NCBI GenBank assembly: GCA_977017575.1
Contig: CDRNVI010000054.1
Location: forward strand, 124,001-188,000
Reading direction: 5' to 3'
Source of the DNA: Paramoeba atlantica
Lineage: Eukaryota; Protista; Discosea
Length of the DNA: 64,000 bases
In this document: positions 735-55,590 of the stretch, piece by piece
Layout: every line of letters begins with the position of its first letter
Numbering within the stretch: position 1 is the stretch's first letter
Made by a program: the position numbers and the translations under genes
Notes under the pieces: generated by a model
What the model was told of the DNA's origin: nothing
The model's input: only the letters and a program-made list of their open reading frames with translations
The model's database searches: none

Positions 735-3700
735 CTAGAAGCGAAGTCCACCTATCCAGTTATCCTTCGGAATGTACTCACGTAGTTGAGATACCACCGT
801 GTATGCGGACATCTTTTCAAGCTCAAGTTGAAATCCCTGTCGTACATTGTCGTAGTTCATTTTTGCGCGCTGCGCTATTGCCTTCAAAAGTGCCTTGGTG
901 TCATTGTGTAGAAGGCCACAGTCTGAGGTGGCCAGACAACGGAAGTATTCACTATCGACACCCTTTTCGGAGACATATTTCTTGATTTTTCGATCGATCG
1001 CTTGTTGTATGAGTGCTGAACTGGTCTGTTTCGCGTAACTGTTGCAACAGGTGTGCACCACCGTGAAGTCATAGAGCACTTCCCCCATGTGTGGCCACAT
1101 GATGGCGAGATCAGGTCCCGAGCGGATACGGCGTGCTTTACATGGATGCTGTTCGGCTACGTCGGCGGCGATGGAGCATTTACATTTGGTGCAGTAATAT
1201 GAGGAGTGAATGCGCGGTTCAGTGATGTTCGGAAGACCTGCTTTGGAACATAACTCTGATAGGTAGCGGACGATGTGGGAATGTTTGCGTGTGCAGTTCA
1301 TACCAGAGCAACGAGAGCAGCCTGCAACATGTGGAATGATGCTGGATGGGGATTCTTGGGTGCAGCATCCAGGGCATGTGACTTTGGCAGGAGCTTGGGG
1401 TAAACTGATTCCTAACCGCATCATGAGTGTGTATCGAAATAAATAAGGATTGATATAATTGCTCGTGCTTTCGAGATGCAAGTTGTTCTCCATAGTGCGT
1501 TTCATTACAAGCTCCAATTGCGAATTCTTCCGTAGCTCGTAAGCCTTCTTTTCGTGTTCTTCTTTCATCTTTTTTTTCAGCAGCTTCTGGGCGACTTCAC
1601 TACGACTTTGTCCGTTGGCGTGTACTTTATCTCCACCTTTTATACCTACTGGAGCGTTATTGGGTTTTGGGTGCTCAACAATAGATTTCCGGGCAGTTTC
1701 AAAGTAGTATTTCTGCTTCAAAGTCGAGGAGATCAATCCTAGGCCGCCTAGTTTCTGAGGAAGTACCGCTAGTTGCAAGGCTTGTGTGTCAGCTCCGCAC
1801 CATTTCTTAAGAACTTGTTGAACGTGGTCTTCGAAGGCTTCGGCTAGCCGCGTGGTTGCTTCCGGACGATGAACTCGCATATGATAATCTTGTCGCGGAA
1901 TTGTGCATCGACGTAGAATTGCGAGGGACAGATTGCTTGGACCCATTAGCAGGAGTCGACGGAAGAGGCATTTGTGTTTTTCCATCTTCCGTAGAAGAAG
2001 ATCTTTTATCACCTCATTTGCTCCTATGTACGCTCCCAATATTTTAAGCGCATCATTCCGGGAGTTAACACCTAAGCGGTTCAGGGACAATAGTTCGTCA
2101 TCAAATGTAGTATTCTTTTGGAACCATTCACATTTCTGAAACTTGACATGCAGGTTAAGATCACTGGTAAGTTCGCGCAAGTGCAAGAACGCTGCCTCAA
2201 GTGACAACACGTTTTTCGAGCTTAGGGTCACGTCATCCTGGTATGCTCTGATCGTTACGTCGGGATATAGGCTGGCTACTTCTCGTATTGGGCTTTGTAG
2301 AAGGGCACAGAAGTACATGGAGGATAGAGCTGAACCTTGGCGGATTCCGGAAGAACTTTCCAAGACGGCGTAGAGGGCATTATGCGCGAAGAAGAGGAGC
2401 TCCGAAGGTAGCCCATACTCAAAGTAGAACGGGCGCAGGAAAGGTTTGAATATGGGATTGCTTACCAGTGTTTGTGCAATGGCATCGCGTCGCGGGGTAT
2501 TATACGCATTGCTGAAATCTACCGTAAGCAACGCATGTCCGTCCTCGTATTCTTGAAGCAATTCGTGGACGATGGATTCGCAGGCATTTTTGTGTAGGAC
2601 TCCTCGTTGAATTGGTGCAAAGAATGTCTTCAAGGTGGTTTCATGTCGCTGCAGTAGAATAGATCCACAGATTTTCAAAATAGTGTCTCCCATGGCAACT
2701 GGACGTATCCCGTTCTGCGGCTTTGGTAGGGCGATGATTCTGCAGCGAGTAAGGCGCTTCCGGACGCTTAGTGGAACTTCTCCGTTGATTACATCTCGAA
2801 CCATGTGGCACAGTGAAAGGCATGATACATCATCGTCTACAAGCAACCGCATCATACTCTCACTTAGCCCGCTTGGTCCGGGGGAAGCTCCACGAGCCAA
2901 TTTTTCAACTGCCAGACGAAGTTCCGAACTTTCAACAACTCCGATGCGTGGGAAGTCAGCTTCCGGTATTTGGATAGGGGGTCCATCAGGATGCAATTCT
3001 CGTAGTTTCTGAAATTTTTCTTCGGCCGAAAGAGTGGAGTCCTTGTAAACGTTATCTAGAATTCGAGTGGCTTTCCCCAGATTCCCTGCTTTGGCTGTTC
3101 GCAACGCGTTTCGGATCGCGCGCCTGTCGATTTCTAGTTCGGCTCGTTGTTCTGCACTTAGATTTATGCCATCTGATAGCTCGTTACGTTCCTTTCGCAC
3201 GTGTCCCACTCTTTGGGTTCTTCTAATTGCATCCCGCACTGTAGCAAGTGAGTCTCGCGGCGCATTCATAAATTTGTGCCAGATCGCTGCTTTCTCAGAA
3301 TCAAGTTCAACAGTGGCATAGCCTCGGATAATCGCCCGGAAGATTGCTACCACATGCACCGCGAAGGATGGCTCGATGTTGGGAAGGTCCGGGAGGGGGT
3401 CGAGATCGCAGCCACTGTCGTCAGACGAGACATTTTCTGATTCCTCCTCCAGGTTCTGGATCGCCGTCTCCACTTGAAGAAGTTTCGTCGCCCGAAGACT
3501 GTAGATTTTAATTTTGTCCGACTGTGGAAGGTATAAGACGCCGCTGGGTCCTTGGTTTCCTAAGGCTGGTTCGTAGGATGCTTTAATTTTAACATTGCCT
3601 TTTCGCGCGGTTCGTCCAACAACAGTCCCTTTCGATTTGTAGCTCTCTGAATTCTGCCGAAACCCCCATTCTATTACGCATTCAGTGCCTTTCCCCCATT

Positions 3701-4187
3701 TCGCCACAGTGTTGTGAACTTGATCTGCTGCTTTTGTGCTGTTGTTTCGCATCGCCATTTCTCCCTGATCAGCGTCGGAATCACTGTCTAGCGTCATTTG
3801 ATCACGCTCACTTTCGATGTCACTCTCTTGCCCGTTTTCAGCTGTTGGAAACGAAAATTGTGTATTGATTTCGCGTGCGTTTCCAGAGTTTTCTTGGTTC
3901 GAGACTATTTTGAATTTTTGCGGAGTAATTTTGATGATGTTCTTTACCGGGGTGATGGTGGGTGTTCCGTGATCGACCCAGTTCTTCGATAAAGGTTCGG
4001 CTCCAATGACTCGGATGCGTGGTGTTTTCTTCGGCTTTTCCGTGGTAGAATTCTTAATTACTGCATCGCTTTTTACGATCTTTTCTTTGCTGTTCGTGTC
4101 TTGCGTCCGTATTTTTACAGTTACACGACCAGATTTCACACTCATACTCTTCGGTGTTTTGGCGGATCCCCGAGCAGGGCGCGTCAT
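735..4187 (-). CDS. Intact 1150-aa non-LTR retrotransposon protein, RT + Zn knuckle + RLE (CRE/SLACS-like family 1)
   Basis: RT motifs VDFSNAYN, GIRQGSALS, AYQDD, LKILGAYIG; CPGC..HVAGC knuckle; GPDL..YDFTVVH RLE core; SL copy 26 nt upstream of the ATG. Confidence 0.93.
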   Translation of the reverse strand: MTRPARGSAKTPKSMSVKSGRVTVKIRTQDTNSKEKIVKSDAVIKNSTTEKPKKTPRIRVIGAEPLSKNWVDHGTPTITPVKNIIKITPQKFKIVSNQENSGNAREINTQFSFPTAENGQESDIESERDQMTLDSDSDADQGEMAMRNNSTKAADQVHNTVAKWGKGTECVIEWGFRQNSESYKSKGTVVGRTARKGNVKIKASYEPALGNQGPSGVLYLPQSDKIKIYSLRATKLLQVETAIQNLEEESENVSSDDSGCDLDPLPDLPNIEPSFAVHVVAIFRAIIRGYATVELDSEKAAIWHKFMNAPRDSLATVRDAIRRTQRVGHVRKERNELSDGINLSAEQRAELEIDRRAIRNALRTAKAGNLGKATRILDNVYKDSTLSAEEKFQKLRELHPDGPPIQIPEADFPRIGVVESSELRLAVEKLARGASPGPSGLSESMMRLLVDDDVSCLSLCHMVRDVINGEVPLSVRKRLTRCRIIALPKPQNGIRPVAMGDTILKICGSILLQRHETTLKTFFAPIQRGVLHKNACESIVHELLQEYEDGHALLTVDFSNAYNTPRRDAIAQTLVSNPIFKPFLRPFYFEYGLPSELLFFAHNALYAVLESSSGIRQGSALSSMYFCALLQSPIREVASLYPDVTIRAYQDDVTLSSKNVLSLEAAFLHLRELTSDLNLHVKFQKCEWFQKNTTFDDELLSLNRLGVNSRNDALKILGAYIGANEVIKDLLLRKMEKHKCLFRRLLLMGPSNLSLAILRRCTIPRQDYHMRVHRPEATTRLAEAFEDHVQQVLKKWCGADTQALQLAVLPQKLGGLGLISSTLKQKYYFETARKSIVEHPKPNNAPVGIKGGDKVHANGQSRSEVAQKLLKKKMKEEHEKKAYELRKNSQLELVMKRTMENNLHLESTSNYINPYLFRYTLMMRLGISLPQAPAKVTCPGCCTQESPSSIIPHVAGCSRCSGMNCTRKHSHIVRYLSELCSKAGLPNITEPRIHSSYYCTKCKCSIAADVAEQHPCKARRIRSGPDLAIMWPHMGEVLYDFTVVHTCCNSYAKQTSSALIQQAIDRKIKKYVSEKGVDSEYFRCLATSDCGLLHNDTKALLKAIAQRAKMNYDNVRQGFQLELEKMSAYTVVSQLREYIPKDNWIGGLRF

Positions 4188-4213: not shown

Positions 4214-4248
4214 CAACAAGGTACAGAAACTGTATCTTTATCGTTAAA
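4214..4248 (-). ncRNA. Spliced-leader exon copy at the 5' end of the 735-4187 element
   Basis: TTTAACGATAAAGATACAGTTTCTGTACCTTGTTG shares TAACG and CAGTTTCTGTAC..TTG with the trypanosomatid SL; followed by A-starting 5' UTR, not by a GT donor. Confidence 0.85.
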
Positions 4249-4249
4249 G

Positions 4250-4509
4250 AAAGGAAAAACCGGAAATACGTGCAAGAGAAAGGGATGGACCCGGAATCTT
4301 TTCAATGCATCTCAATGACTGATTGCGGCCTGTTGCATGAAGAAACGAAAAGTCTCCTCAAGGCTTTGTCGAAAAGGGCTGACTGCGATACTCAAGTAGT
4401 GCGTCAAGCCTTTCAGCTCGAAATTGAAAAATTCTCTGCTTATGCAGTTGTTTCTCAACTACGACAATACATTCCTGCCGTACAGTGGGTAGGAGGGCTT
4501 CGTTGTTGA
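4250..4509 (+). pseudogene. 5'-truncated RLE C-terminus of a family-1 sister element
   Basis: KYVQEKG..DCGLLH..QLRQYIP..WVGGLRC aligns with the C-terminus of 735-4187; head-to-head with the SL copy. Confidence 0.85.
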
Positions 4510-5790: not shown

Positions 5791-6239
5791 TGTAATAATG
5801 ACCCCTCTTCTGGGAAAGATCGGCCGGCGCCGAGGAAACTTTGCATTAGGTGCACTGTACGGTCTTCTCCCTCCCCGTACAGTTTGATGGGGCGTCCGGC
5901 CCCGGGGCCGAGTCACTTTGACCCGGCGATGTTGTGGCCGTTTCGGGAGGCCATTCCCCGTCCGCCTCGGGCGCGCCCTATGTTGTTGTTGTTGTTGGGT
6001 CCGGGCCATTTGTCTCCGAAGAGATGTGGCCTCCTCACTTTCCGCGTAGGTAGCGGTGCGGGTGCTCCACGCGGGGAGTAAATCTACAGCGCGAGAGCCT
6101 AGGCTCAACCGCAGCATGTAGACACCCGACTTGCCTCCTCCGGGAGAATGAGGTGTCATGCCCTAGTTGTTTAGTGTCTTGTTATCTTGACACCGGGCGA
6201 CCCATGCAAAGGGCGTGGCGATGGGGGTGTTGGCAAGCG

Positions 6240-6520
6240 CGGCGGGGAGTGTGGCAGGGAGCGCGGCGGGTGGCGCGGCGGGTGGCGCGGCGGGTGGCGC
6301 GGCGGGTGGCGTGGCGGGTGGCGCGGCGGGTGGCGTGGCGGGGAGCACGGGTGGGGAGCTCAGCGGGGAGGGATGCGGGGAGCACGGCGGGTGGCGTGGC
6401 GGGGAGCACGGGTGGGGAGCTCAGCGGGGAGGGATGCGGGGAGCACGGCGGGGAGAGCAGCGGGTGGCGCGGCCGAAGCGCGGCGGGTAGCACGGTGGGT
6501 GGTCAGAGGGAGGGGTGAAG
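6240..6520 (+). repeat. G-rich minisatellite: (GGCGCGGCGGGT)n plus ~48-bp duplication
   Basis: About 7 units of the 12-mer at 6261-6342; agcacgggtggggagctcagcggggagggatgcggggagcacgg at ~6343 and ~6404. Confidence 0.9.
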
Positions 6521-6800
6521 GGGGTCATGGGGGTAATCTTCTCCAAAGATTATGCTGAATGACACCCTCCCTAGTTCCTTAGTACCTTGTTATAAAACTC
6601 TTGGAAATGTAATTGGGCCTTTGTACTAGTGTCAGGAATTAAGGAAAACATGAAGGACTTATTCGTGAACTACGGCATGATATTATTTGCAAAATTAGAC
6701 AGACTTTTCTTATTTGTATTTCGCACGAATAAAAGTGGAGCGGGCGAGCCCCGTCGTAAGTAACCGCAAGTAAAGATCTAGCAAGTACATAAGATAAATA

Positions 6801-6815
6801 TTCTGTACCTTGTTG
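6801..6815 (+). ncRNA. SL 3' remnant TTCTGTACCTTGTTG at the YR-1 transcript 5' end
   Basis: Exact match to the last 15 nt of the SL copies; joined to ACAGACTTTT, which follows TTAG in the other two copies. Confidence 0.8.
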
Positions 6816-6857
6816 ACAGACTTTTCTTATTTGTATTTCACACGAATAAAAGTGGAA

Positions 6858-8108
6858 ATGGTGCAAACACGTTCGAAAGCACATGATTCTCAAGAGGACT
6901 ATGCCACGGATAGCGACACTGAACAAACGTGCGGCACATATTACCCAAAACCGAATTCGACACAAATCACTTCGAGCCACTCACTTCCAGATGTTTTCCT
7001 CACCGAACAGGTCAATACAGTCGTGGAAAAGCTAACGCGTGCACTTGAAAAAGTCACTTCGAAGGTTGATGCGATGGAGGAGCGTGAACGGAAAAGGCGA
7101 AAAGAGACAAACATTACGGATCCATCTGCACCGCGACACGGACAAGCACCTGGGAACACCTTATGTCCTCTTCCAACCTCCTTGAAAAAGAGATGCAGTG
7201 TGCCAGAAGAGCTCAACAAGTAATACGCCGCACAAAGGGTTATGCTCCCAGAGGAAGTAGAGAGTCAAGTCAATGAGGTTATGGCGACCATGCAACAGAA
7301 TGACATAGAAGTCGAAGTAACCTGGTTCCCCGTTGGAGGTAGGAAAGAGACAGCGACAACATGGCGAGGTACGGTAGAGGACAATGGAGACGAGGAAAAT
7401 CCTATCATTGTTTCCTACCCATGGGGTAACTATCCTCTGCCTAATAGCAACGTGTGTTATACGCGCATCGTGATATCAGCAAGTGAGCCAAAGATGCCAG
7501 GCAAATTGCCCGAATCGGACGATGAAACTGCACCATCAGAAGAGACGAACGACAGTTTCAACCTCCGGGACGTTACAACATGGAACACATACATTACCCA
7601 GGGGCCACTAGGGATTGAAATATTGAAACAGCGGTTGCGAACGGCGCTGGATCTCCCTTCTCGAATGTCACCACAGCTACAAGCCCTTTGGGATATCTTG
7701 TGTGCTTGGATAGACGATAGCGCAGAAAGAGGGGGCGTGAACAGCGACGCCGTCAATCACAAAAACGTCGGCCAAAGCACAGTTGACCAGATACGCATTC
7801 TGCAAGGAATATATCGAGGAGCAGATGCTCGATATATACGCTCACAATACGTTACCCAGAAAGACCCACAGGACCGACTTGGTAATGTAATTGAGCAAAG
7901 CGTAACCTACAATCAAGCAACCACGTATACGAGCCGTGGATCCCAGCGGACCCGCTATACGCCTCGCATGCCGATACGAGGGCGAGTATATGCAAATCGG
8001 ACCCCCATAAATCGGACTGGCATACTAGAACATGGCATTACGCGTCAAGCGACCATCGCACCACGCGCTCCGGATTTTCGTGGACGGGGGATCGGTCCAC
8101 AGCACTGA
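6858..8108 (+). pseudogene. YR-1 gag-like ORF, one in-frame stop at 7221-7223
   Basis: Track ORFs 6810-7223 and 7242-8108 share a frame; first ATG at 6858, 42 nt after the SL junction. Confidence 0.7.
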
Positions 8109-8204
8109 CTCTCAAGAGTCCTCCCTCCGAGGAAGAGCAAGTACACACCAATAAAAAGGAAGTTAAAAGATCAAATACAGAATCCAAAATACAAAAATAT
8201 CAAT

Positions 8205-9365
8205 ATGAAGCAGAACACGAAAACGAAAACGAAAATACAAAGTCAAATTACAATAAACAAAGCAAGTACAAAACGGAAAAACATTTATCAGCCAGTATTA
8301 CGGATCAGCACCTCTATCCGACCCGTTTGCAAGACACAAACGGAAAAACTACCGTCTCACACGTGCAAATTTCGAATCAGCAATATCGATACCCACAGAT
8401 CCACTACCCGACGTATCATCACCAAGGCTCATCGTCAGACCAATGGATCCCACATCAAAATATCGAATATCACCCAGCCACCGAGACACAACATACCCCA
8501 GGAACAGACCCCCTATTACGTTATGTCCAATTTCCTCAACGTGACATCTCCTTCGGTAATGGAGGCGTTGAAGCCTATGTGGGCGGAGACAACATGGACT
8601 ACCAGGTGCCATCTGCTATGCCATATGCGGAGTGTGGGAATACCCATTACGGATACGGGGGTCATACGATTTATTATGGGACGCCCGATATCTACACAGA
8701 CCAAGCTCACGTACCTAAAACACCTTATAGCAATTTTAAAGCGACTGGAACTCTCTACGCGGCAATCCCAAATGTACACGAAAGTGTTGATCCGCAAGGG
8801 GGCATCTATCCCACAGCACCAGGCGGCCCCAGTAACCAAGAAGGATTTGCAGAAAACGCTTATGAGCATGCCGGAAGACAGAGCAGTGGTTGCACTCCTT
8901 GCTTTCAAAACAGCTTCCCGGGCTGGGGAAATCGCCAAGCTACGCAGGAAGGATGTTATAGTGCTCCGCCCGTCACGTATTATCATCAACTGGGGTACGA
9001 AATCGAAAACCTCCAAGGCATAACCATTCCGCCCCGACAATCTAGTGGTAATCGAGGGAGAAACCACCAGGCGTATCTACAACTACCTGAAGAGGTTAAG
9101 CCCGCATCAGCGGATCAGCAACTGTACAACACAAGACCTCACTCGGACGCTCAAGAAAGGACTGGGGAGCAATTACAGTTCCCACTCCCTCAAGCATGGA
9201 TCAGTCCAATACCTGATGAGGCAAGTCGCCAAAGGCTCCATAACTATGCCGCAAGTCATGCAGCTGGCCAAACACAAACAATTGTCAACCCTTATGCGCT
9301 ATGCAGGTATGAACGAGACTACGGCACTGGCACTGGGAAGTCAGAAGCTGACCAAACTCCTATGA
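8205..9365 (+). pseudogene. YR-1 tyrosine recombinase, one in-frame stop at 9021-9023
   Basis: FKTASRAGE (Arg), HSLKHGS, LAKHKQLSTLMRY (His, Tyr); overlaps the RT ORF in another frame. Confidence 0.85.
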
Positions 9366-11026
9366 AATCTAAGACGCTCGAATACCAAGGTGGGTGGATC
9401 GGAATCACGGAGAAAATGCAGTACGGTATTCGACGTACGATAACCAGAATGTTTCGCCGAACATGCCGCCCTACGGCGGAGCAGATGCAGACGCTACCTA
9501 TCCACGCGAAACATGTACCGCCGCTGTACCTGGAACGTTTAACTTCTTTGATGAATGCGCCTACGCGAGAACGTTTCACACAAGTGTGGGAACTACTTAT
9601 TAACCCAACGAACGATGCACCAATCACCACTATACCTCTCGTATCTCCCACATGTCTGAGCAAGAAAGACGTATGCATCTTGATCGATGTTGATGTCCTG
9701 GAAAGAGTAAATGACCAAACATTGCACAAATATCCGACCAAAGGAATCGTACACCCTTTTACGAACGTCGAAGAACGCGACACTGGATTACGTAGACGAT
9801 TTATTTGTTGGCCTAAAGAACATAATGCTGCTATTGAGGATGCATATAAAGCTGACGTACCAATAGGACACCCCACGATGTATATGCCCGCCGTACAACA
9901 ACAGTATGCAGTGAAGAGAGACCTCAGTTGTGGTTTTTACCAAGTAGAATTGCCGGTTGAAGCTCGGGCACATTATCGTTTCGCATATAACGGCGGCCTA
10001 TACCAACTGAAGCGCATGCCCATGGGACATGCGTGCGCGCCAGAGATTCAACATATAGCAACCAGTGTCTTAGCTGGAGACGGGAAGTATACCTCATTGG
10101 CACATCGATTCAAGGGACAGTTAGATATCTATCTGGACGGGATCCGCTTCAGTGGCACAGCAGAGCAAAGCCATGTATATGAACAGTGGCTGGAGGAACG
10201 GGCTAAAGATATTGGAATGACCTTCAAACCGAGTGATTCTTACATAGGTACGAACTACAATTTCCTGGGAATAGAATATGACCATAGCCAACAAAAATGC
10301 CGAATAGGAGAGCGTTTTCTCAACAAGATCCCAAAACAAGCACCCGAGTTGGCGCAACTTCACGTATACGAATCCTTAATTGCTCGCCTCATTTATGCAT
10401 CCGCGGTATCAGGGATCTTATTACCAAAGTACTATTGGGTGATAAAATATATTAGAAGACAGCTCTCAAAATTAAATAGAGGGGTGATGCAGGACACAGA
10501 TACAATTGTGCCATCCGCTAACATATACCAGCAAATGAACGAATGGGTATACCAAATACATAAGAATCCATGGCGCGCTTGCGCAGACGTCAGTACCCCA
10601 GTAACAGTAATGTACACCGACGCGTCGAAAGCTGGATGGGGCGCAGTATTATTCCCTTCAATAGGCCCAATGACGGCCACAGGCAGCTTATGGGAAGAAC
10701 CCTATGAAATAAACAAAGCGGAAATTTTGGCGGTCGAGCGGGCCTTACATACGTTTGAGGCGTATTGGCACGAGAACAAACGTCTCCACGTATACGTAGA
10801 TAACACTAGTGTGCAAGCCGCCATGACACGTAATTGGGCGGATTCGGAGGGATTGGCCGAGGTATTATATCGAATACTAACCTATTTACGCGAGATGAAT
10901 ATTATACATTCAACATCATACGTTAATACAAAACAAAACCTCGCAGATCCGTGGAGTCGCGGAAAATTTGATACTTCGCATGGGGTGATACTTGCGAAGG
11001 GGTGGAGCGGGCGAGCCCCGTCGTAA
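8327..11026 (+). CDS. YR-1 reverse transcriptase / RNase H (899 aa)
   Basis: KRDLSCGFYQV, RMPMG, IYLDG, YNFLG; RNase H YTDASKAGWGA, INKAE, VYVDN, NLADPWSR. Confidence 0.92.
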   Translation: MQDTNGKTTVSHVQISNQQYRYPQIHYPTYHHQGSSSDQWIPHQNIEYHPATETQHTPGTDPLLRYVQFPQRDISFGNGGVEAYVGGDNMDYQVPSAMPYAECGNTHYGYGGHTIYYGTPDIYTDQAHVPKTPYSNFKATGTLYAAIPNVHESVDPQGGIYPTAPGGPSNQEGFAENAYEHAGRQSSGCTPCFQNSFPGWGNRQATQEGCYSAPPVTYYHQLGYEIENLQGITIPPRQSSGNRGRNHQAYLQLPEEVKPASADQQLYNTRPHSDAQERTGEQLQFPLPQAWISPIPDEASRQRLHNYAASHAAGQTQTIVNPYALCRYERDYGTGTGKSEADQTPMKSKTLEYQGGWIGITEKMQYGIRRTITRMFRRTCRPTAEQMQTLPIHAKHVPPLYLERLTSLMNAPTRERFTQVWELLINPTNDAPITTIPLVSPTCLSKKDVCILIDVDVLERVNDQTLHKYPTKGIVHPFTNVEERDTGLRRRFICWPKEHNAAIEDAYKADVPIGHPTMYMPAVQQQYAVKRDLSCGFYQVELPVEARAHYRFAYNGGLYQLKRMPMGHACAPEIQHIATSVLAGDGKYTSLAHRFKGQLDIYLDGIRFSGTAEQSHVYEQWLEERAKDIGMTFKPSDSYIGTNYNFLGIEYDHSQQKCRIGERFLNKIPKQAPELAQLHVYESLIARLIYASAVSGILLPKYYWVIKYIRRQLSKLNRGVMQDTDTIVPSANIYQQMNEWVYQIHKNPWRACADVSTPVTVMYTDASKAGWGAVLFPSIGPMTATGSLWEEPYEINKAEILAVERALHTFEAYWHENKRLHVYVDNTSVQAAMTRNWADSEGLAEVLYRILTYLREMNIIHSTSYVNTKQNLADPWSRGKFDTSHGVILAKGWSGRAPS

Positions 11027-11809
11027 GTAACAGCAAATAAAGATCTAGCAAGTACATAAGATAAATATTTAGATGCACTTTTGAGACCATACAAAATTAC
11101 GTTCTACTACTGGAATAAGCCGAATGGTAAACCGCGACGGAATATTAGACGATACACACATAATAGATGACAACAATACAGCTACTAAGTTGTTTATTAA
11201 ACAATGGATTAATTAATATGTGTTACCCAGAGACGGCTTGTCAAGGAGGATTCAACGTGTTGTCAAGGCCCAATTATAAAACTCTTGGAAATGTAATTGG
11301 GCCTTTGTACTAGTGTCAGGAATTAAGGAAAACATGAAGGACTTATTCGTGAACTACGGCATGATATTATTTGCAAAATTAGACAGACTTTTCTTATTTG
11401 TATTTCGCACGAATAAAAGTGGCCCACCCACCTCCCCGCTCCGCGCGGGCGAGCCCCGTCGTAAGTAACAGCAAGTAAAGATCTAGCAAGTACATAAGAT
11501 AAATATTTAGATGCACTTTTGAGACCATACAAAATTACGTTCTACTACTAGAATAAGCCGAATGGTAAACCGCGACGGAATATTAGACGATACACACATA
11601 ATAGATGACAACAATACAGCTACTAAGTTGTTTATTAAACAATGGATTAATTAATATGTGTTACCCAGAGACGGCTTGTCAAGGAGGATTCAACGTGTTG
11701 TCAAGGCCCAATTATATCCGGTACCGGGCGGTGTCATTCTCACGCTGCGATGTCTGGGTGACCGTTACCCTAGTTATTTTGTGCCTTGTTTTGTTGGCAC
11801 CGGGTAGTG

Positions 11810-13640: not shown

Positions 13641-15200
13641 GCTACGCGACGCCTTCATGGAAAACAATCAAATCCCAGAACGCACATACTCCGCGGAAGG
13701 AGTTGATCACCTGCCGATTCCGACAATGCGATCAGTGAGCCCCGATTTTATTCCATGCGTTTTGGCCACACTGCGCGATATAGTACACGATTACATTAGC
13801 TCCGAGCATCCGCAGCGCAATCGAATTTGGCATCGCCTACTTTCAGCGATGAAGCTTTCTCTATCCACAATAAGACGAGCGGACAAGGGAAGCAAGAGAA
13901 AACGACCGTTCCGACAGCAGGCCGAAGTCCATGAGCGGGACGAAGCAAAGGCTCAGGATGTCCGAGCAATAAAGAAAGCGACACGGCTGGTATTGGAAGG
14001 CTGTGCGACGAAGGGCGCCAGAGTCATGGGCCAAAACTTCACTTCATTGGATCTGACGGATGAGGAGATATTGGACAAACTTGCACAGCTACACCCCCAA
14101 CGGCCTTGCGACTTCACAGCCCCTGAGGACGCCCCAGTTCTCGCCGGTATATCACCGAAAGAATTAAGGTGTGCGGGAAAACGCCTGGCGAAAGGTGTAA
14201 GTCCGGTGCCAACCGGAATGACCGACAGCATTGTAAGACTCATGTTAGACGACGAGGTTTGTTGTTTGAATTTGTGTCACATGTTGTGTGATCTTCTGAA
14301 CGGTTTCCTTGCCAAAGAAGTCATCTTTCGTTTGAACCGGGCGCGGTTGGTTGCCATCCCCAAGGAAAATGGCGGGGTCCGTCCGGTGAATAAACTGGCG
14401 GGAATTGTGTTAATGCAACGATACGAAAACACCCTCGCCCCTATGTTCACGCCAGTGCAACAAGGAGTTCTCTCCCGAGCCGGTTGCGAAAGAATAGTGC
14501 ATAAACTGCGTGACAGGTACGACAAGGGATACTCGATCCTATCGGTAGATTTCAAAAATGTTTTCAACACGCCCTGCAGGAAAGAAATCGCCCGACACGT
14601 TTTCGCTTTCAGCGCCCTTCGTCCTTTCCAGCGGTTCTTTGAGGTTGAATATGCGGGGGCGTCTGAGCTCTTGTACTACGGCTCTGAGGGAAAGTTGGTG
14701 GGAATCGTCCCCAGCTCGTCGGGACTCCGTCAGGGATCTCCTCTCGCATCTTTGTACTTCTGTGTATTCATGCAACCGATCTTGGAAACCCTAAACGAGG
14801 AATTCCCGGAAGTGGAGTTTCACGCCTACATTGATGACATCACGACGGCTTCACCACATCCGGAACAAATTGAGAAGGCTTTTTTTTTTTGAGACTCCAA
14901 GAAATCATGGCTACCCAATCAATTGAACTTGCGTCCAAAAAGTGAGTTTGGTTTGGAGGGAAAAATCAGCTAACAATACCATCATGCCTGCATGAGGCGG
15001 GGGTCGTCAATGCGAAAGATACTAAGAAGATTTTGGGGGCCCAAATCGGTTGTGGGAAGATGGTGAAAGAACTTTTAGCGGGACAAGTATCGAAGCATGA
15101 AATCAGTTTTGACCGATTGAAGAGGATGGGATCGAACAACGTGTCACTCATAATTTGGCCTTTGCATCAAGGGGAAGGTTTGCATTGCTCGTCTTCATCA
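13639..15200 (+). pseudogene. Family-2 CRE-like RT region, frameshifted at the T run near 14880-14890
   Basis: RARLVAIPKENGGVRP, VDFKNVFN, GLRQGSPL, AYIDD; continues in ORF 15033-15230. Confidence 0.88.
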
Positions 15201-15520
15201 CATTGTTTCACATGTAGAAGTATTTACTAATCTTGTTCTAGAATCAAATGCTTTTTGCTCGTCTCCTTCACTGCGCCTCGTTCAAAATAGTACTTCTTTT
15301 CTATCTGACTCCGTTGTTAAAATACCTTGAGTTATGTACTTGCTCGTTTTCTACTTGCTTGTTACTTACGATGGGGCTCGCCCGCGCGGTGCGGGGAGGT
15401 GGGTGGGTCACTTTTTCTTCTCAATGTTAAAAGAATCGTAATACAGATCTACCAACAAATAGAATATGAACTAGTAAAATAATAACAATACAACTTTGAA
15501 AGTTTTATGTCACCAGACAC
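15170..15520 (-). mobile_element. Solo A2-linker-B2 relic of a YR-1-related element
   Basis: Minus strand AAAAAGTGA-CCCACCCACCTCCCCGCACCGC-GCGGGCGAGCCCCATCGTAAGTAAC matches YR-1 11415-11470. Confidence 0.75.
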
Positions 15521-15680
15521 TGGCCAAATTACACTTCCTAGAGTCCGATGTTTGAAAGCTACTTCTAGAGAGGCTTCATTTTTGGAACTCATTGTGACGT
15601 CATCCTGATAAGCTCGTAAGGTGACTTCTGGATACGCATCCGCGACTTCCTTCAAAGCTCCTTGTAGCAGTTCAAAGCTC
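15520..15680 (-). pseudogene. Short family-1 RT fragment
   Basis: EVADAYPEVTLRAYQDDVTMSSKN vs EVASLYPDVTIRAYQDDVTLSSKN in 735-4187. Confidence 0.8.
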
Positions 15681-15766
15681 CTTGTACCTTGTTGCTTGTT
15701 GTGAATAAGGGGGGAGAAGTATGAAACGCGGCATTGCCTCTATTTTTTTACCCAGTAGACGAACCT

Positions 15767-32090: not shown

Positions 32091-33023
32091 TTCATGTCCC
32101 CACAAATAACCTTCATTGCAGCACTCGATTCGTGCCAGGCATCGAAAAGGGATTTGTCGAAATCATCTTGCTTCTCCTTCTTGGCCGTTACAATCGGGGA
32201 GTACACGTTAAAAATATTGACTTTACTATTCCCAATTCTAACCTCTGCCTCCATAATTCGGTGTGATATTTGTTCGACTGTAAGCGGTTTCGTACTTAAG
32301 AATGCCATACCATTATAACCGGCCGTAGCGCTCATAAGATACATGAATCCATCCTCTCCCAATGTATAATTTTTGATGCACGATGGAGTCATTATTTGCA
32401 AAGCTTAGTCTCGTCTCTTGTAGTGCAAAGATGGATATGCCGTAGCTCTTCATGCAGTTAACCACTTGATGTAACCTAAGGGACCTACGCAGTGCGTTCA
32501 CTTCCGTACTCTTAATTTTCAACGTGTCCACGTTCAAGCTGCCAAGTACAAAGTCCTCGTTCATAGCATAAATGTTGGGTCTCTGCTCCCGGACGCCACG
32601 CCGAGAACAGCATTTGCGCTTCCTATATCTCTTGCGAATCCTTTTAGTATCCAGAGAAGCAACTCGCCCCCCTGACACAAGTATTCGAGGATCCTTCGGA
32701 GGAAAATGAAAAAATCGGTCAACTACTGCATCAAATTTTACCTAGCGGAAACCGTCCGGTTCAACCGACACAACAGAACCTTCCCACATCCTCGTACTAT
32801 AGTCATATGACTTGCACCAGGTTATGACGAACCTCTTCCCCGGAACCATAAGTGACTGCATTCGACACAGGGCCCGCTGCCGGAGTATCGCTACTCCCTC
32901 TCTCCGCTGAGTAGGCAGAAAGAGGTTTCCCCGTTGACACGTGGCCTTCCGTAACTTCTCTTTGACCGAGAGCAAGCTGGCAAAAGGTCCGGACGCCTCC
33001 GCCTTCTCCCTAGAAATATTCAT
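32090..33023 (-). pseudogene. 5' part of an APE-type LINE: N-terminal module + AP endonuclease
   Basis: LGSLNVDTL, IFALQETRL, NIFNVYSP, VICGDMNA; stop at 32742-32744 and one frameshift. Confidence 0.8.
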
Positions 33024-33992
33024 TAATAGGAAGAAATCAACTTAATAGGAAGAAATCAACTTAATAGGAAGAAATCAACTTAATAGGAAGAAATCAACTT
33101 AATAGGAAGAAATCAACTTAATAGGAAGAAATCAACTTAATAGGAAGAAATCAACTTAATAGGAAGAAATCAACTTAATAGGAAGAAATCAACTTAATAG
33201 GAAGAAATCAACTTAATAGGAAGAAATCAACTTAATAGGAAGAAATCAACCTAATAGGAAGAAATCAACTGAATAGGAAGAAATCAACTGAATAGGAAGA
33301 AATCAACTTAATAGGAAGAAATCAACTTAATAGGAAGAAATCAACTGAATAGGAAGAAATCAACTGAATAGGAAGAAATCAACTTAATAGGAAGAAATCA
33401 ACTTAATAGGAAGAAATCAACATAATAGGAAGAAATCAACTTAATAGGAAGAAATCAACTTAATAGGAAGAAATCAACTTATGGGAAGAAATCAACTTAA
33501 TAGGAAGAAATCAACCTAATAGGAAGAAATCAACTTTAATAGGAAGAAGTCAACTTAATAGGAAGAAATCAACTTTAATAGAAAGAAATCAACTTTAATA
33601 GGAAGAAATCAACTTATAGGAAGAAATCAACTTAATAGGAAGAAATCAACTTAATAGGAAGAAATCAACTTATGGGAAGAAATCAACTTAATAGGAAGAA
33701 ATCAACCTAATAGGAAGAAATCAACTTTAATAGGAAGAAGTCAACTTAATAGGAAGAAATCAACTTTAATAGAAAGAAATCAACTTTAATAGGAAGAAAT
33801 CAACTTAATAGGAAGAAATCAACTTTAATAGGAAGAAATCAACTTAATAGGAAGAAATCAACTTTAATAGGAAGAAATCAACTTTAATAGGAAGAAATCA
33901 ACTTTAATAGGAAGAAATCAACTTTAATAGAAAGAAATCAACTTTATAGGAAGAAATCAACTTTAATAGGAAGAAATCAACTTTAATAGGAA
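33023..33992. repeat. Tandem array (TTAATAGGAAGAAATCAAC)n, ~50 units of 19-20 bp
   Basis: Directly visible; no spacers; variant units form a duplicated higher-order block. Confidence 0.97.
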
Positions 33993-34920
33993 TGTGCTGA
34001 GACCAAAGACGTGTTTCGCAATGTCGTTTCTGGATGGTGAGTTAAAGGCATTTTTAAGATCAATGGAGAGAATGGCCTGGCCTTTAAGATATCGATCGCG
34101 CAAAGTGTGTACAATGCGTTCACGTCCCGCTCTGGACAGGTTTCCTTGTTACATCGGGGCGAAAAGGGGCTCAAGCGTGTGCTCGTATCTTTGTAGTAGT
34201 ACAATCCCTGCGAGCTTTCCTATGACCTCCCCCATAGCTATTGGTCGAAGCCCCCCGTCTGGCTTAGGAATCGCAACGAGTCTAGCACGGTTCAATCGTT
34301 GTATTACTTGCTTTGAAAGGAAGCCATTCAGCAAATCCGCAATCATATGACATAAATTGATAACCGCTGGCTCATCGTCGACTAGAAGTCTCAGGGTGGT
34401 ATCCGTAGTCCCTGATGGCCCTGGGCTGGCACCTTTGGCCAGTCGTCGGCAAGCTGCCCGCAACTCCTCTGGTGATATTCCGGCAATTATGGGGCATCGC
34501 TCGGTACCCGTAACTCGGAGGGTCGTTGGGGGTGAAGTTCTCCCAGCTTCTCGATAGTTTCTTGATCCGATAATTCATTTTTCTGGAATGTTTGATCAAG
34601 AACTTTCGCTGCCTTAGTGTTGCATCCTTCCAGAACCAATCGTGTCGACTTTTTTATTGCTCGATCATCGCTGTCTTTTTCTTGATCAGTTTCGCTTTCT
34701 TTATCGTGAATCGCTTCCAACGAACGTCCTTCTTCATTATTGTGGTTCGAATCAGATGGCGGGCGTCGTTTCCTTTGTCTGTTGCTGAGCGTTCGTATGT
34801 TGGCTAAGGAGAGCTTGGTGGCCGATAGCACTTTATTTCATATGCGATTACGTTCAGGGTAGTCACTGTATCCGTACGCGTGTATTATGTCACGATAGAG
34901 TGCCACTACTGCGGGAATAA
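33993..34920 (-). pseudogene. Family-2 CRE-like RT N-region fragment
   Basis: RLAKGASPGPSG, RARLVAIPKPDGGLRPIAMGE; homologous to 13639-14892. Confidence 0.85.
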
Positions 34921-35349: not shown

Positions 35350-36270
35350 TCATCCCTCGTAGTCTGATGCGCAACTATCGGAACTGAGTTCCTCAAATTC
35401 TTCGTGAACGGGAAAACCGTAGTTGTCTTTAATACACTTCATTATATTAACAAAGCGACTCTGCCAAGACTGCTCGCGGCCATTATGGGTCTCCCCATAC
35501 TTTACACACTGGAGCGCGACGTTTCGCTTCAACTCCAACGTTGTTGCCCCAAAATTATAGTGTTGGAGTCTTACCCAATACTTAATGGTGTTGTGGACAC
35601 TCCCAGCACCATTAGTATGATATCCGTTCTTGTTCACAAACTCCTTACTATGATTCACGGAGTAGTGACGACAAACTTTGTCCAAACCATTGTAAGCCCC
35701 CCAACAATCGCTCACTACCACGGATCGCGCACTGGCAAGATGGGGAATGATGAAGCCATGAAGGGTAGGCGTATCACGACGCTTTACCAATTTCCAATGG
35801 GTCCGCCCCGTTTTACCAGTGCCACGAGACTCCGTGACAGTTGCGAACCACCATCCCCTTTTCCGCTGTCTACGGTCCCGATTATACTTCCGTTTGCCGA
35901 TGAAGGTCTCATCGACCTGCACTCGACTGAATTCATAATGAGACATGGTTTCGTTACGGAGCGCTGCATCAGCAAGAGTGTGCAGGAGATCCTGAACCAC
36001 CTTGCGATCAAGTCCACGATTACGCGTTATTTGACCCGTGCACATGTTGTTCGCAATGTCTGCCCATACGAGCAAGACTTGCCCTGGAGTAAGTTGCGTA
36101 CGGGGAGAAATAAATGGTGACCACTTACAAACTTTCAATCGGCAACGGTTCACCTTGCCGGGTTCTCGATGCCCACACATACTTAGATTTGGTTTCCCTG
36201 GAACGTCGGACATAAAGTGCATCCCGTGCGAAGGACAAATAGGTGGGAAAAACAAATCATGATTCCGCAT
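35350..36270 (-). pseudogene. Merlin / IS1595-family (ISXO2-like) transposase, probably inactive
   Basis: VQVDETFIGKRKYNR, VVSDCWGAYNGL, VNHS, HTNGAGSVH (expected Glu replaced by Gly). Confidence 0.85.
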
Positions 36271-36559
36271 CCAGTGTTCTGCACCAGTCCTTGTTGCATC
36301 AGTCCTTGTGGAATATCTGTAATACTCCGCCAATGAGAAACACAGGTAAAAGCGGGACAGGAACAGGTCGTCTGCGCAAAATAGAGAAATCGAGTTGTTC
36401 TTGTTGGGGAGGAGGTAATTCACGCAGCCCAGTAGGCGGCCGCTCGTAAGTAGCAGTTTCCAGGAGAGCCATTTGTAGGATCAAACACAAAGTCACGCGA
36501 TTCCCCGAATCATACAGGAATAACATCTCCATACATCGGAAAGCCCCAAGACAGAGAAA

Positions 36560-49736: not shown

Positions 49737-49772
49737 CAACAAGGTACAGAAACTGCATCTTTCTCGTTAAAG
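49737..49772 (-). ncRNA. SL exon copy upstream of zinc-finger ORF
   Basis: CTTTAACGAGAAAGATGCAGTTTCTGTACCTTGTTG followed by AATTAT. Confidence 0.85.
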
Positions 49773-49775
49773 ATA

Positions 49776-50564
49776 CAGTGGTTTCAGTTGATCTTGCCCC
49801 CCCCCTCGGAATTTTGATTTTTTTTATCCATTTTTGCTCATCTTTGCAGCATTGGAGAGATCTCGTTCCCCTAGCGAAGAGCTTTGCCGCCTTTTTTTCA
49901 TAGAGACCCCCTGGCACCCCCTGGGTGACCCGAAAGTTGACCAAAATAAAAAAAAATGGCATTTTTTTACCGTATCAAAAATGGAACGAAAAACGGATTT
50001 TATGTCCAAAAGTTAACTCTGAAGGAAAAGAACTAGTATCCGGAATGGCCTCCATTGTTTTGCAACATTTTTTGAAGTCTATTAGGGACTGAATCAATTG
50101 TGTTGCACACTTTACTTTTTTCTTGAGGACGTTTTAGAATCCGAAAAGCTATTGGGGGATTGTCTTCTCTTTTGTCATTCCATCCTTGTACGTACTCCCC
50201 CTGTTTGGGGTTAGAGGGTCTGGTCTGCATAATGTAGAGGTGTTGACTATATTAAATTAGGCGATAGGGATGGTAATAGACATAGAGCTTTCAAATTATC
50301 AATTTAGAACACTATTACTCGTACTTACATGTTCAAAATGTACAAAAAATCGAGAAAATGTGACAAAAAATGGTTGTGTACACAGAAAACGTCCAAAAAA
50401 AACAGTGTTTTTCGGACCCAGGGGGCACCAGGGGGTCTCTATGAAAAAAAGGCGGCAAAGCTCTTCGCTAGGGGAACGAGATCTCTCCAATGCTGAAAAG
50501 ATGAGCAAAAATGGATAAAAAAAATCAAAATTCCGAGGGGGGGCAAGATCAACTGAAACCACTG
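49776..50564. mobile_element. 789-bp Tc1/mariner-type MITE with ~150-bp TIRs and TA duplication
   Basis: TA-CAGTGGTTTCAGTTG...CAACTGAAACCACTG-TA; internal remnant DSVPNRLQKMLQNNGGHSGY typical of Tc1 transposase C-termini. Confidence 0.93.
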
Positions 50565-55331: not shown

Positions 55332-55367
55332 CAACAAGGTACAGAAACTGTATCTTTGTCGTTAAAG
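55332..55367 (-). ncRNA. SL exon copy at 5' end of element C
   Basis: CTTTAACGACAAAGATACAGTTTCTGTACCTTGTTG, 34 nt before the ATG. Confidence 0.87.
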
Positions 55368-55376
55368 ATAAGGTAA

Positions 55377-55590
55377 GGCTCTGTGGGACAAAACGTGTGC
55401 CACAGTGACAACACCAGAGCTTCCCCCCTGATCGAGGGTCATTCATTGGTGTATGTAAAGTCAATAGGAAGGAAAAGAGAAATAATTCAACAAGGTACAG
55501 AAACTGTATCTTTATCGTTAAAGGTATGTTTTTTCTAAAGATATTGTTTTTTAAAGATATTGTTTTTTTTATCGTTAAAGATATGTTTTT
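55377..55590 (-). repeat. 214-bp direct repeat (SL stutter + SL 55488-55523 + start of Zn-finger ORF); partner 49626-49775 + 50567-50630
   Basis: About 4 differences once the MITE and one TA are removed. Confidence 0.92.

What the first reader, a model, noticed from the sequence alone, without database searches (positions are those of the whole stretch)
6590..11422. YR-1 keeps the splice acceptor lost by trans-splicing in an internal repeat; frozen strand-transfer junction at its 5' end
Seen: the 40-nt block ACAGACTTTTCTT...AAAAGTGG occurs three times. At 6699 and 11383 it follows TTTGCAAAATTAG; at 6816 it follows SL sequence TTCTGTACCTTGTTG, i.e. SL replaces everything up to the AG exactly. 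The 5' end reads A1 - 64 nt of repeat B - SL remnant - 40-nt block - ATG, with GTGG and TT microhomologies at the joints. Inference: the split repeat A2 is the template that restores outron and acceptor removed from the RNA 5' end, with the 40-nt block as the transfer homology. This copy overran into the SL, jumped to B, then to A2. That would give split direct repeats a trans-splicing-specific function.
Basis: partly seen in the sequence, partly recalled or inferred. Interest (0 to 1): 0.9.

Follow-up and report, generated by a model that had tools for sequence, protein, structure and literature searches.

The report
Spliced-leader fossil inside a VIPER-like retrotransposon
A dead copy of a tyrosine-recombinase retrotransposon in a euglenozoan genome keeps, as DNA, the host spliced leader joined exactly at a splice acceptor inside its terminal repeat, so the element's RNA was trans-spliced before it was copied; the way the lost repeat is rebuilt is inferred, not shown.

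Summary
The 40-nt block lies at 6699, 6816 and 11383. At 6816 it follows the last 15 nt of a genuine spliced-leader (SL) exon; in A1 and A2 it follows an AG. An SL RNA gene with a GTATGAGAAGC donor was found in a metagenome contig.

The element is a VIPER/TATE-like YR retrotransposon with split direct repeats (A1, gag-like ORF, YR, RT/RH, B1-A2-spacer-B2). It sits at a TTATA core in an SL-like satellite. This copy is dead: it has a stop in gag at 7221 and one in YR at 9021.

Logan contigs of three runs indicate that most copies are plain A1-ATG. None carries the B64-SL joint, so the 117-bp insert is private or rare.

The SL-a40 joint is best read as a fossil of a trans-spliced element RNA. Rebuilding A1 from A2 is the standard split-repeat model. 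It fits here (A1 = A2, 149/149), but it is not specific to trans-splicing.

A direct A|B joint is common in two runs, so a single illegitimate switch onto such a template is at least as likely.

No RNA data could be laid. The scan noted similar A-SL-A' joints elsewhere in this genome (s1-369850, s1-370024, s1-369998).

The parts
6530..6589 (+). 5' flank: unit of an SL-like, highly repeated satellite that is the target site
   Evidence: Depth up to 3884 in X1, and an empty-site contig that continues TTCGGTACCGGG after TTATA. An uninterrupted paralogue, L004:305-160(-), aligns across the insertion point without a gap.
6590..6594 (+). TTATA crossover core, shared by the target, the B end and the A start; repeated at 11274-11278 and 11712-11716
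6590..6738 (+). Repeat A1 (149 nt), identical to A2
   Evidence: family D4; 0 mismatches.
6697..6698 (+). AG inside A1, the inferred SL trans-splice acceptor (same AG at 11381-11382 in A2)
   Evidence: The block that follows this AG is the block that follows the SL exon end at 6816.
6739..6802 (+). B': copy of the first 64 nt of repeat B, joined directly to the A end through a shared GTGG
   Evidence: family D5. The same A|B joint is seen in X3 contig 6710-6764 at depth 90.
6801..6815 (+). Last 15 nt of the host SL exon (the first TT is shared with B63-64)
   Evidence: SL RNA gene with its splice donor in L005.
6816..6855 (+). a40': second copy of the last 40 nt of A, with a private G>A at 6840
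   Evidence: The body contigs carry one unlisted mismatch near their start, inferred to be G at 6840.
6858..7223 (+). ORF1, the N-terminal part of the gag-like ORF, ended by a stop at 7221-7223 that contigs of all three runs read as C (CAA)
   Evidence: 7221 T>C in X1, X2 and X3.
7242..8108 (+). ORF2, in frame with ORF1: the C-terminal part of the gag-like ORF (416 aa when fused). No Pfam match.
   Evidence: A similar gag-like tail occurs in L003:14280-14450.
8205..9365 (+). Tyrosine recombinase ORF, broken by one in-frame stop at 9021-9023
   Evidence: The two pieces align colinearly, at 50% and 59% identity, to the intact YR of L004, which passes Pfam PF00589.
8327..11026 (+). RT/RNase H ORF overlapping the YR ORF (RT about 9896-10276, RNase H about 10604-10837)
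   Evidence: Relatives at 31-48% identity.
11006..11278 (+). Repeat B1, preceded by the G-rich GAAGGGGTGG. Its first 20 nt encode the end of RT/RH.
11274..11422 (+). Repeat A2, with the AG at 11381-11382 and the 40-nt block at 11383-11422
11423..11444 (+). C-rich spacer between A2 and B2 (CCCACCCACCTCCCC...), conserved in four other VIPER-like families
   Evidence: Probably corresponds to the roughly 30-bp unique region of SIRE (PMC6681497).
11445..11716 (+). Repeat B2, ending in the TTATA core
11717..11790 (+). 3' flank: continuation of the target satellite unit
   Evidence: X1 empty-site contig.

Best explanation
YR-1 is a VIPER/TATE-like tyrosine-recombinase retrotransposon with split direct repeats, in a euglenozoan (diplonemid- or kinetoplastid-type) genome. 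It integrated at a TTATA core in an SL-like satellite.

Its RNA is SL trans-spliced at the AG 40 nt before the end of repeat A. The RNA therefore starts SL + a40 + gag and lacks the first 109 nt of A1, including its own acceptor.

In normal copies (plain A1-ATG, the majority) a complete A1 must be rebuilt. Most simply, the minus-strand cDNA pairs its a40 end with the a40 of the internal A2 and is extended. This is the standard split-repeat model, with trans-splicing as the cause of the 5' loss.

The window's copy is a rare aberrant product. The cDNA ran 13-15 nt into the SL and then switched illegitimately (TT overlap) to position 64 of a B repeat. Most likely that template already carried the direct A|B joint, as an abundant non-autonomous derivative does, after which completion was normal. 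The result is A1 - B(1-64) - SL15 - a40' - gag.

Shown: the anatomy; that the SL is genuine; the exact joint at the AG; and that the insert is missing from the read-derived contigs. Inferred: that most copies are plain A1-ATG; trans-splicing of the replicative RNA; A2 as template; the order and number of jumps.

The copy has since died, with stops in gag and in YR.
For: - The block occurs three times, against none in shuffles.
- The SL 15-mer is joined to the base that follows the AG in A1 and A2.
- The SL is real: SL exon plus GTATGAGAAGC donor next to a 5S gene in L005. It is of euglenozoan type (PMC3795323) and heads five other ORFs in the window and four in the ENA loci.
- VIPER-like anatomy: gag-like ORF, YR overlapping RT/RH, repeats A1...B1-A2-B2 (PMC6681497; PMC12278014).
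- Clean insertion at TTATA (X1 empty-site contig).
- A1 = A2 at 149/149, while a40' differs at 1 of 40.
-, read by de Bruijn logic: the body contigs start at 6826/6827, which equals 6709/6710 + 117. They therefore begin with the last 30 nt of A and continue AAATGG (depth 280.6 in X1). The A contig is not split at 6699 by any SL entry. The depth in 6803-6825 is fully accounted for by the neighbouring contigs in all three runs.
- X3 contig 6710-6764 carries the direct A|B joint at depth 90 and is a sister branch of the plain form (depth 52.8).
- Five VIPER-like families all have a T-rich tract plus TAG 31-41 nt before the A end.
Against: - No RNA data. The only RNA-labelled run (X5) laid nothing, so use of the AG rests on one DNA fossil here plus unchecked notes from elsewhere in the genome.
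- The pyrimidine tract before the AG is weak (12 of 25 pyrimidines).
- The contig evidence is indirect. Logan contigs drop rare variants, a filter removes some records, and the G at 6840 in the majority is inferred from an unlisted mismatch, not read.
- The replicative template could be an unspliced precursor that still holds all of A1, with the fossil coming from a by-product mRNA.
- The TAG spacing was noticed after the fact.
- Three other VIPER-like copies (YR-2, L001, L004) have no A1 at all, so rebuilding of A1 clearly often fails or those copies are truncated.
Confidence: 0.6

Rival explanations
1. On a single RNA, the minus-strand cDNA overran into the SL, jumped to B (TT microhomology), copied B back to its start, and made a second jump (GTGG microhomology) from the sequence before B1 to the end of A2.
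For: Both microhomologies are present. B' starts AG like B1, not CG like B2. Other family variants also break exactly at the A end (6737 to about 7111; 6738 to 6969), so the A end looks like a recurrent landing point.
Against: It needs two illegitimate events in one molecule. The direct A|B joint already exists at high depth in X2 and X3 and continues there as normal B without any SL, so it does not have to be created in this event.
Confidence: 0.2
2. DNA-level recombination. A non-autonomous A|B-A-spacer-B derivative was resident at this site. It acquired the internal region by homologous recombination in B(1-64) with a circular or end-joined cDNA of an element mRNA (SL - a40 - ORFs - B1..64) whose 3' end lay at B64, about 310 nt upstream of the A2 acceptor.
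For: A single crossover reproduces the exact arrangement. It explains why the joint is at B64 (the RNA 3' end), 44 nt after the RT/RH stop codon. The derivative with the A|B joint exists.
Against: There is no poly(A) remnant at the B64|SL joint. The position of the RNA 3' end is unknown. It requires a cDNA circle that lacks A2 and B2.
Confidence: 0.1
3. The insert is not a one-off. It is a heritable 5' UTR variant of a small subfamily, because a copy with this structure would regenerate it when trans-spliced at the A1 AG.
For: The structure is in principle transmissible. Earlier notes report A-SL-A' joints in other pieces of this genome (s1-369850, s1-370024; unchecked).
Against: No contig of X1-X3 covers 6803-6825, although its neighbours have depths of 50-280. 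This copy carries two nonsense mutations.
Confidence: 0.07
4. An artefact or a DNA-level coincidence: a misassembly or chimeric read, or integration next to an SL-like target sequence rather than copying of a spliced RNA.
For: The joint has no support in the Logan contigs. The element's own target is an SL-like satellite (...TAGTACCTTGTTATA), so SL-like DNA does lie beside YR-1 ends.
Against: The 15-mer matches the true SL, not the satellite variant. Both boundaries are exact (last base of the exon; first base after the AG). A YR crossover at TTATA would not yield an element starting at a40.
Confidence: 0.03

Closest known systems
VIPER and TATE (VIPER-like YR retrotransposons of kinetoplastids; order DIRS) and their short derivative SIRE
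   Same: A gag-like ORF, then overlapping YR and RT/RH ORFs. Split direct repeats A1...B1-A2-B2. No target-site duplication. A short unique spacer between A2 and B2, as in SIRE (A2 + about 30 bp + B2) (PMC6681497, PMC12278014). From my own recollection, not retrieved here: SIRE was reported to supply a trans-splice acceptor to T. cruzi P2-beta genes (Vazquez et al. 1994).
   Different: The host has a different SL (…CCTTGTTG) and is not a known trypanosomatid. No direct comparison with VIPER or TATE sequences was made; the nearest database RTs, all unnamed, are at most 48% identical. This copy carries an SL fossil inside its 5' end, which I did not find described for VIPER or TATE.
Ngaro and PAT-like elements and the Goodwin-Poulter split-repeat replication model
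   Same: The same A1...B1-A2-B2 layout. The model holds that the internal repeats restore ends missing from the transcript, which implies A1 = A2 at insertion (summarised in PMC6681497). Here A1 = A2 at 149/149.
   Different: By my own recollection, the 5' loss in those hosts is ascribed to an internal promoter. Here the cause would be SL trans-splicing at a defined AG, which gives a measurable 40-nt overlap.
Relict spliced leaders of dinoflagellate retrogenes
   Same: DNA copies of SL-capped RNAs mark retroposition (PMC5585692, PMC6050394). The window also holds SL-headed ORFs and tandem partial SLs.
   Different: Here the relic sits inside an otherwise complete YR retrotransposon, between its restored terminal repeat and gag. 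It does not head a host retrogene.
R-region strong-stop transfer of LTR retroelements
   Same: A short repeat at the RNA 5' end that recurs near the 3' end could guide minus-strand transfer and rebuild the upstream promoter or processing signals.
   Different: The 3' end of the YR-1 RNA and its primer are unknown. The repeats are split, not LTRs. Integration is by a tyrosine recombinase at a B|A junction.

Membership tests
VIPER-like (VIPER/TATE) YR retrotransposons | ORF order gag-like, YR, RT/RNase H, with YR and RT/RH overlapping | tested here: met
   ORF map. RT and RNase H Pfam matches in 8327-11026. The YR frame 8205-9365 overlaps that ORF.
VIPER-like (VIPER/TATE) YR retrotransposons | Split direct repeats: A1 at the 5' end and B1-A2-B2 at the 3' end | tested here: met
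   Families D3 and D4; identities.
VIPER-like (VIPER/TATE) YR retrotransposons | A tyrosine recombinase domain | tested here: inconclusive
   The element's own two pieces score below the Pfam cut-off (15.6 and 17.1 bits against 27.1). They align colinearly, at 50% and 59% identity, to the L004 YR, which passes PF00589. The gene is broken by a stop at 9021, and the conserved HxxR reads HSLK.
VIPER-like (VIPER/TATE) YR retrotransposons | No target-site duplication; integration at a short shared core | tested here: met
   TTATA is shared by the target, the B end and the A start. An empty paralogue aligns across the site without a gap, and an empty-site contig exists.
VIPER-like (VIPER/TATE) YR retrotransposons | RT/RH phylogenetic placement with VIPER and TATE | not tested
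   No tree was built. The nearest database proteins are unnamed.
DNA relic of an SL trans-spliced RNA | The sequence equals the 3' end of the host SL exon | tested here: met
   15 of 15 to the exon of the SL RNA gene in L005, which is followed by a GT donor, and to five longer relics in the window.
DNA relic of an SL trans-spliced RNA | The SL is joined at a position that follows an AG in the unspliced copy | tested here: met
   6697-6698 and 11381-11382 are AG; the block starts at the next base.
DNA relic of an SL trans-spliced RNA | SL-bearing transcripts of the element are seen in RNA data | tested here: inconclusive
LINE-mediated processed retrocopy | A poly(A) tail and a target-site duplication around the SL-headed segment | tested here: not met
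   There is no A run at either joint. The segment continues seamlessly into B1-A2-B2 and the TTATA core.
LTR-type R-region strand transfer | The same short repeat lies at both ends of the genomic RNA | not testable with these tools
   The 5' end is inferred from the fossil; the 3' end of the RNA is unknown.

The most novel reading that the evidence does not exclude
In SL-trans-splicing euglenozoans, VIPER-like elements replicate from an SL-capped RNA that begins only 31-41 nt before the end of repeat A. That short stretch would work like the R region of LTR elements. In every cycle the internal A2 would regenerate the outron and the acceptor that trans-splicing removes. This would be a host-specific use of split direct repeats, visible as a conserved T-rich tract plus TAG at a fixed distance from the A end in five divergent families. 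Copies such as this one would then be natural snapshots of failed strand transfers.
Probability: 0.45. Interest if true: 0.7.

Novelty: new variant of a known kind. Interest (0 to 1): 0.5.

Why it matters
To my knowledge, how tyrosine-recombinase retrotransposons are reverse-transcribed has not been worked out experimentally; the literature I read cites it only as a proposed model (PMC6681497). I found no paper that asks how such elements cope with hosts that replace every mRNA 5' end by a spliced leader. This copy fixes one point of the cycle in DNA: the RNA 5' end lies at a defined AG, 40 nt inside the terminal repeat. It also preserves one illegitimate template switch. That turns the split-repeat model into something testable with 5'/3' RACE and a census of copies. 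[quoted passage not shown] It is not a new kind of element, and the scan has noted similar joints elsewhere in the same genome.

Tried and rejected
- RNA test of the acceptor. The look-up of sequencing runs was first busy. It then gave four runs of unknown kind and one RNA-labelled run.
- Other YR-1 copies through proteins. The RT/RH search found nothing above 48% identity, so the family is absent from that database. The ENA loci L001-L004 are other families of the same or a sister organism.
- Metagenome scan for the 40-nt block: no match. The second scan, with the SL, gave the SL RNA gene.
- Rfam on the window: nothing at gathering score.
- My first reading, that the 23-nt C-rich stretch at 11423 was an oddity of this copy. 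Rejected: it is conserved in L001, L004, YR-2 and the relative at 15.4 kb.
- My first reading, that the majority carries A at 6840 and that something unknown lies upstream of 6826. Replaced by the unitig-overlap reading (6826 = 6709 + 117), which also explains the sister contigs in X3.
- Other SL-headed segments in the window and loci were searched for a repeat of their post-SL sequence behind an AG. Only YR-1 shows it.
- A1 was sought upstream of YR-2, L001 and L004: none found.
- A Y-branch or poly(A) origin of the B64 joint was considered and dropped. There is no intron sequence and no A run.
- Literature linking split direct repeats to trans-splicing: none found. PMC15765 is not held.
Full report
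**1. What is in the sequence.**

- The 40-nt block ACAGAC...AAAAGTGG lies at 6699-6738, 6816-6855 (one mismatch, 6840 A for G) and 11383-11422. It occurs nowhere else in the window and in none of 100 shuffles.
- At 6699 and 11383 it follows ...TTTGCAAAATTAG. At 6816 it follows TTCTGTACCTTGTTG.
- The repeat finder gives A1 6590-6738 = A2 11274-11422 (100%), B1 11007-11278 versus B2 11445-11716 (99%), and a 68-nt family 6735-6802 / 11002-11069 / 11440-11507.
- Exact counts: A1/A2 0 of 149 differences; B1/B2 2 of 272; B' against B1 and against B2 2 of 64 each; a40' against a40 1 of 40.

**2. The 15-mer is a true spliced leader.**

- The window holds five further copies, all on the minus strand (4214, 49737, 55332, 55488, 59147). 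Each is part of a longer ...TTTAACGATAAAGATACAGTTTCTGTACCTTGTTG, followed by a short T-rich leader and the ATG of a retroelement ORF.
- A scan of metagenome contigs with the last 20 nt gave one contig, L005. There the same 38-39-nt sequence is followed by GTATGAGAAGC, the splice-donor start that I recall from kinetoplastid SL RNA introns. A 5S rRNA gene lies about 400 bp away.
- The sequence fits the euglenozoan SL pattern ...ACAGTTTCTGTAC..TTG tabulated in PMC3795323. Linkage of SL RNA and 5S genes is described for diplonemids and other euglenozoans in PMC10161547.
- So 6801-6815 is the 3' end of the host SL exon. It is joined to the very base that follows an AG in A1 and A2. That is the signature of a trans-spliced RNA copied into DNA.

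**3. What the element is.**

- ORFs: 6858-7223 and 7242-8108 (same frame, no Pfam match, gag-like by position). A YR frame runs 8205-9365. A long overlapping ORF 8327-11026 has RT and RNase H matches.
- The two YR pieces on either side of the stop at 9021-9023 align colinearly to the intact 246-aa YR of locus L004 (50% and 59% identity). That protein passes Pfam PF00589.
- Gene order, overlapping YR and RT/RH, and repeats A1...B1-A2-B2 are the published anatomy of VIPER and TATE (PMC6681497; PMC12278014).
- Ends: the B end, the A start and the target all share TTATA.
- Joining the two flanks gives a sequence that aligns without a gap across the insertion point to a paralogous satellite unit, L004:305-160 minus strand.
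- A contig of run X1 shows the empty site (...CCTTGTTATA then TTCGGTACCGGG).
- The target is a very abundant satellite (depth up to 3884 in X1) whose core, ...TAGTACCTTGTTATA, resembles the SL 3' end.

**4. The spacer is canonical.**

The 22-23 nt between A2 and B2 (CCCACCCACCTCCCC...) looked odd at first. The same C-rich motif sits between A2 and B2 in four other VIPER-like elements:
- L004 9800-9823;
- L001 10741-10764;
- a second element in the window (YR-2, 38674-38697);
- a YR-1 relative at 15407-15385 on the minus strand.

In each of the three that have a B1 (L001, L004, YR-2) a G-rich run lies just before it, as in YR-1. It probably corresponds to the roughly 30-bp 'exclusive' region that separates the A and B parts of T. 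cruzi SIRE (PMC6681497).

**5. Is the 117-bp insert fixed in the family?**

The single reads call laid Logan contigs of three runs of the same organism (X1-X3) on 6530-7429.

- These contigs behave as assembly pieces whose neighbours share their last and first 30 nt (I assume word size k = 31).
- In X1 the A contig covers 6605-6738 and ends exactly at the A end.
- The body contig (1645 nt, depth 280.6) starts at 6826, which is 6709 + 117. It therefore begins with the last 30 nt of A and continues AAATGG....
- In X2 and X3 the body contigs start at 6827 (= 6710 + 117).
- In X3 a 55-nt contig 6710-6764 (the A|B joint, depth 90) starts from the same node. The two are sister branches after ...GTGGA.
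- Each body contig carries one mismatch that the table does not list. It must therefore lie near the contig start. The only candidate is 6840, with G as in A1 and A2.
- The A contigs are not split at 6699, as they would be if many copies had an SL entering there.
- The depth of bin 6800-6829 is exactly the sum of the two neighbouring contigs in all three runs, so nothing covers 6803-6825.

Taken together:
- the common form is plain A1-ATG;
- the B64|SL15 joint is private or rare;
- the direct A|B joint is common in X2 and X3, but there it runs on as normal B (contigs continue TAGATGCAC after 6802).

Caveats: the tool states that contigs drop rare variants and that a filter removes some records, and the G at 6840 is inferred, not read.

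**6. State of this copy.**

Contigs of all three runs read C at 7221. That turns this copy's TAA into CAA and fuses ORF1 and ORF2 into one 416-aa gag-like ORF. With the stop in YR, this copy has at least two disabling changes. It is a fossil, not an active element.

**7. How it most likely arose.**

*Shown.* An RNA with SL joined at the A acceptor, followed by a40, gag and the rest, was reverse-transcribed at least 13-15 nt into the SL. It ended up in a copy that has a complete A1, correct ends and a clean TTATA integration.

*Inferred.*
- (a) This RNA is the normal template.
- (b) Such an RNA lacks the first 109 nt of A. Complete A1s in the plain majority must therefore be rebuilt, most simply by pairing the cDNA's a40 end with the a40 of A2 and extending. 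This is the general split-repeat model, under which A1 = A2 at insertion (PMC6681497). The 149/149 identity fits.
- (c) In this copy the cDNA did not transfer at a40. It ran into the SL and switched, with a 2-nt overlap, to B position 64.

From there two routes reach the observed A|B joint.
- My preferred route: plain copying of a template that already has the joint. Such a template, a non-autonomous derivative lacking the whole interior, is abundant in X2 and X3. After trans-splicing it would read SL-a40|B-A2-spacer-B2, so the ordinary a40 transfer would then complete A1.
- A third route: DNA-level recombination between a resident derivative and a cDNA of an mRNA that ends at B64. This also reproduces the structure, but no poly(A) remnant is present at the joint.

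I cannot separate these routes without RNA ends and a census of copies.

**8. Hints of a general design.**

In five VIPER-like families whose A repeats show no evident sequence similarity, A2 ends with:
- a T-rich tract plus TAG at 40, 36, 41, 38 and 31 nt before the A end;
- a purine-rich end (AAAGT followed by G or T);
- the C-rich spacer.

This was noticed after the fact and AG dinucleotides are common, so it is only suggestive. It is what a conserved acceptor at a conserved distance would look like.

Against generality, YR-2, L001 and L004 have B1-A2-spacer-B2 but no detectable A1 upstream.

**9. Comparison with what is known.**

- The element is a member of the VIPER/TATE-like group by anatomy; no phylogeny was done.
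- Relict SLs marking retroposed RNAs are well known in dinoflagellates (PMC5585692, PMC6050394).
- That the VIPER terminal repeat (SIRE) can supply a trans-splice acceptor is, to my recollection, in the older T. cruzi literature. I could not retrieve it here.
- I found no paper that links split direct repeats to recovery from trans-splicing, or that reports an SL inside a YR element.
- By my own recollection, the same layout occurs in Ngaro and PAT-like elements of hosts without SL trans-splicing. The repeats therefore cannot have a trans-splicing-specific origin; at most they are put to a host-specific use here.

**10. Earlier notes of this scan.**

Similar joints were flagged in other pieces of the same genome (s1-369850, s1-370024). 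One follow-up (s1-369998) concluded that an SL was joined at an AG of a YR terminal repeat, but in a LINE chimera. Here the SL-headed segment is the element's own body inside a complete element, which goes further. I did not check those notes and do not count them as support.

**11. Verdict.**

- Observation: confirmed.
- Interpretation: partly supported.
- Ordinary in kind (a VIPER-like element), unusual in detail (a preserved SL joint and an illegitimate switch).
- Worth an RNA-end experiment and a genome-wide census.

Noticed in passing
window 4214-4260, 49737-49790, 55332-55390, 55488-55620, 59147-59190 (minus strand); L002:3400-3444, L004:13975-14015: Near-full-length SL copies sit directly in front of a short T-rich leader and the ATG of large retroelement ORFs (for example 51272-55297 and 735-4187). 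Upstream of 55500 lie tandem partial 5' pieces of the SL. Retroelements of this genome are commonly copied from SL-capped RNA.
   Followed up: partly
SL relics listed above, compared with L005:26-63 (minus): The first 3-4 nt of the relics vary (ATC, ACC, AC, C) against AAC in the SL RNA gene. This is what reverse transcription through modified cap-proximal bases might give. Not tested.
   Followed up: no
window 6530-6594 and 11717-11800; L004:160-305 and 3620-3756 (minus): The YR-1 target is a very abundant satellite whose core, TAGTTTCTTAGTACCTTGTTATAT, resembles the 3' half of the SL exon. It is flanked by inverted GGCACC / GGTGCC. Other YR-1 copies have different flanks (loose ends), so the preference is not absolute.
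   Followed up: partly
window 11423-11444, 38674-38697, 15385-15407 (minus); L004:9800-9823; L001:10741-10764: A conserved C-rich spacer (CCCRCCCRCCTCCCC...) lies between A2 and B2. It is partly complementary to the G-rich run just before B1 (GGGGTGG / GGGTGGG). It may be a long-range pairing or priming signal. Its function is unexplained.
   Followed up: partly
window 6737-6738 (contigs of X2 and X3): Three independent family variants break at the last base or two of A: 6737 joined to about 7111, 6738 joined to 6969, and A|B. In X3 the ORF1-deleted variant is the deepest continuation of A (324.6). The end of A looks like a hot spot for joins. Unexplained.
   Followed up: no
window 35350-38891 (YR-2) and 15170-15720 (minus): A second VIPER-like element has B1 38360-38554, A2, spacer and B2 38697-38891 but no A1. 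There is also a solo A-spacer-B unit related to YR-1 at about 15.2-15.5 kb.
   Followed up: partly
L003:13277-13291 and 14461-14477: Two more SL relics are cut to 15-16 nt (TTCTGTACCTTGTTG), like the one in YR-1. The second interrupts a gag-like ORF at a TTTCTGT microhomology. Truncation near SL nucleotide 24-25 may be recurrent.
   Followed up: no
window 6205-6510 and 32910-34000: A G-rich 12-nt-period satellite (GGCGGGTGGCGC-like) lies just upstream of the YR-1 target. A long array with a 19-20-nt period lies at 32.9-34.0 kb.
   Followed up: no
L005:450-568: A 5S rRNA gene (Rfam 98 bits) lies next to the SL RNA gene in a JGI metagenome contig. An organism with this SL therefore occurs in an environmental sample.
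   Followed up: no
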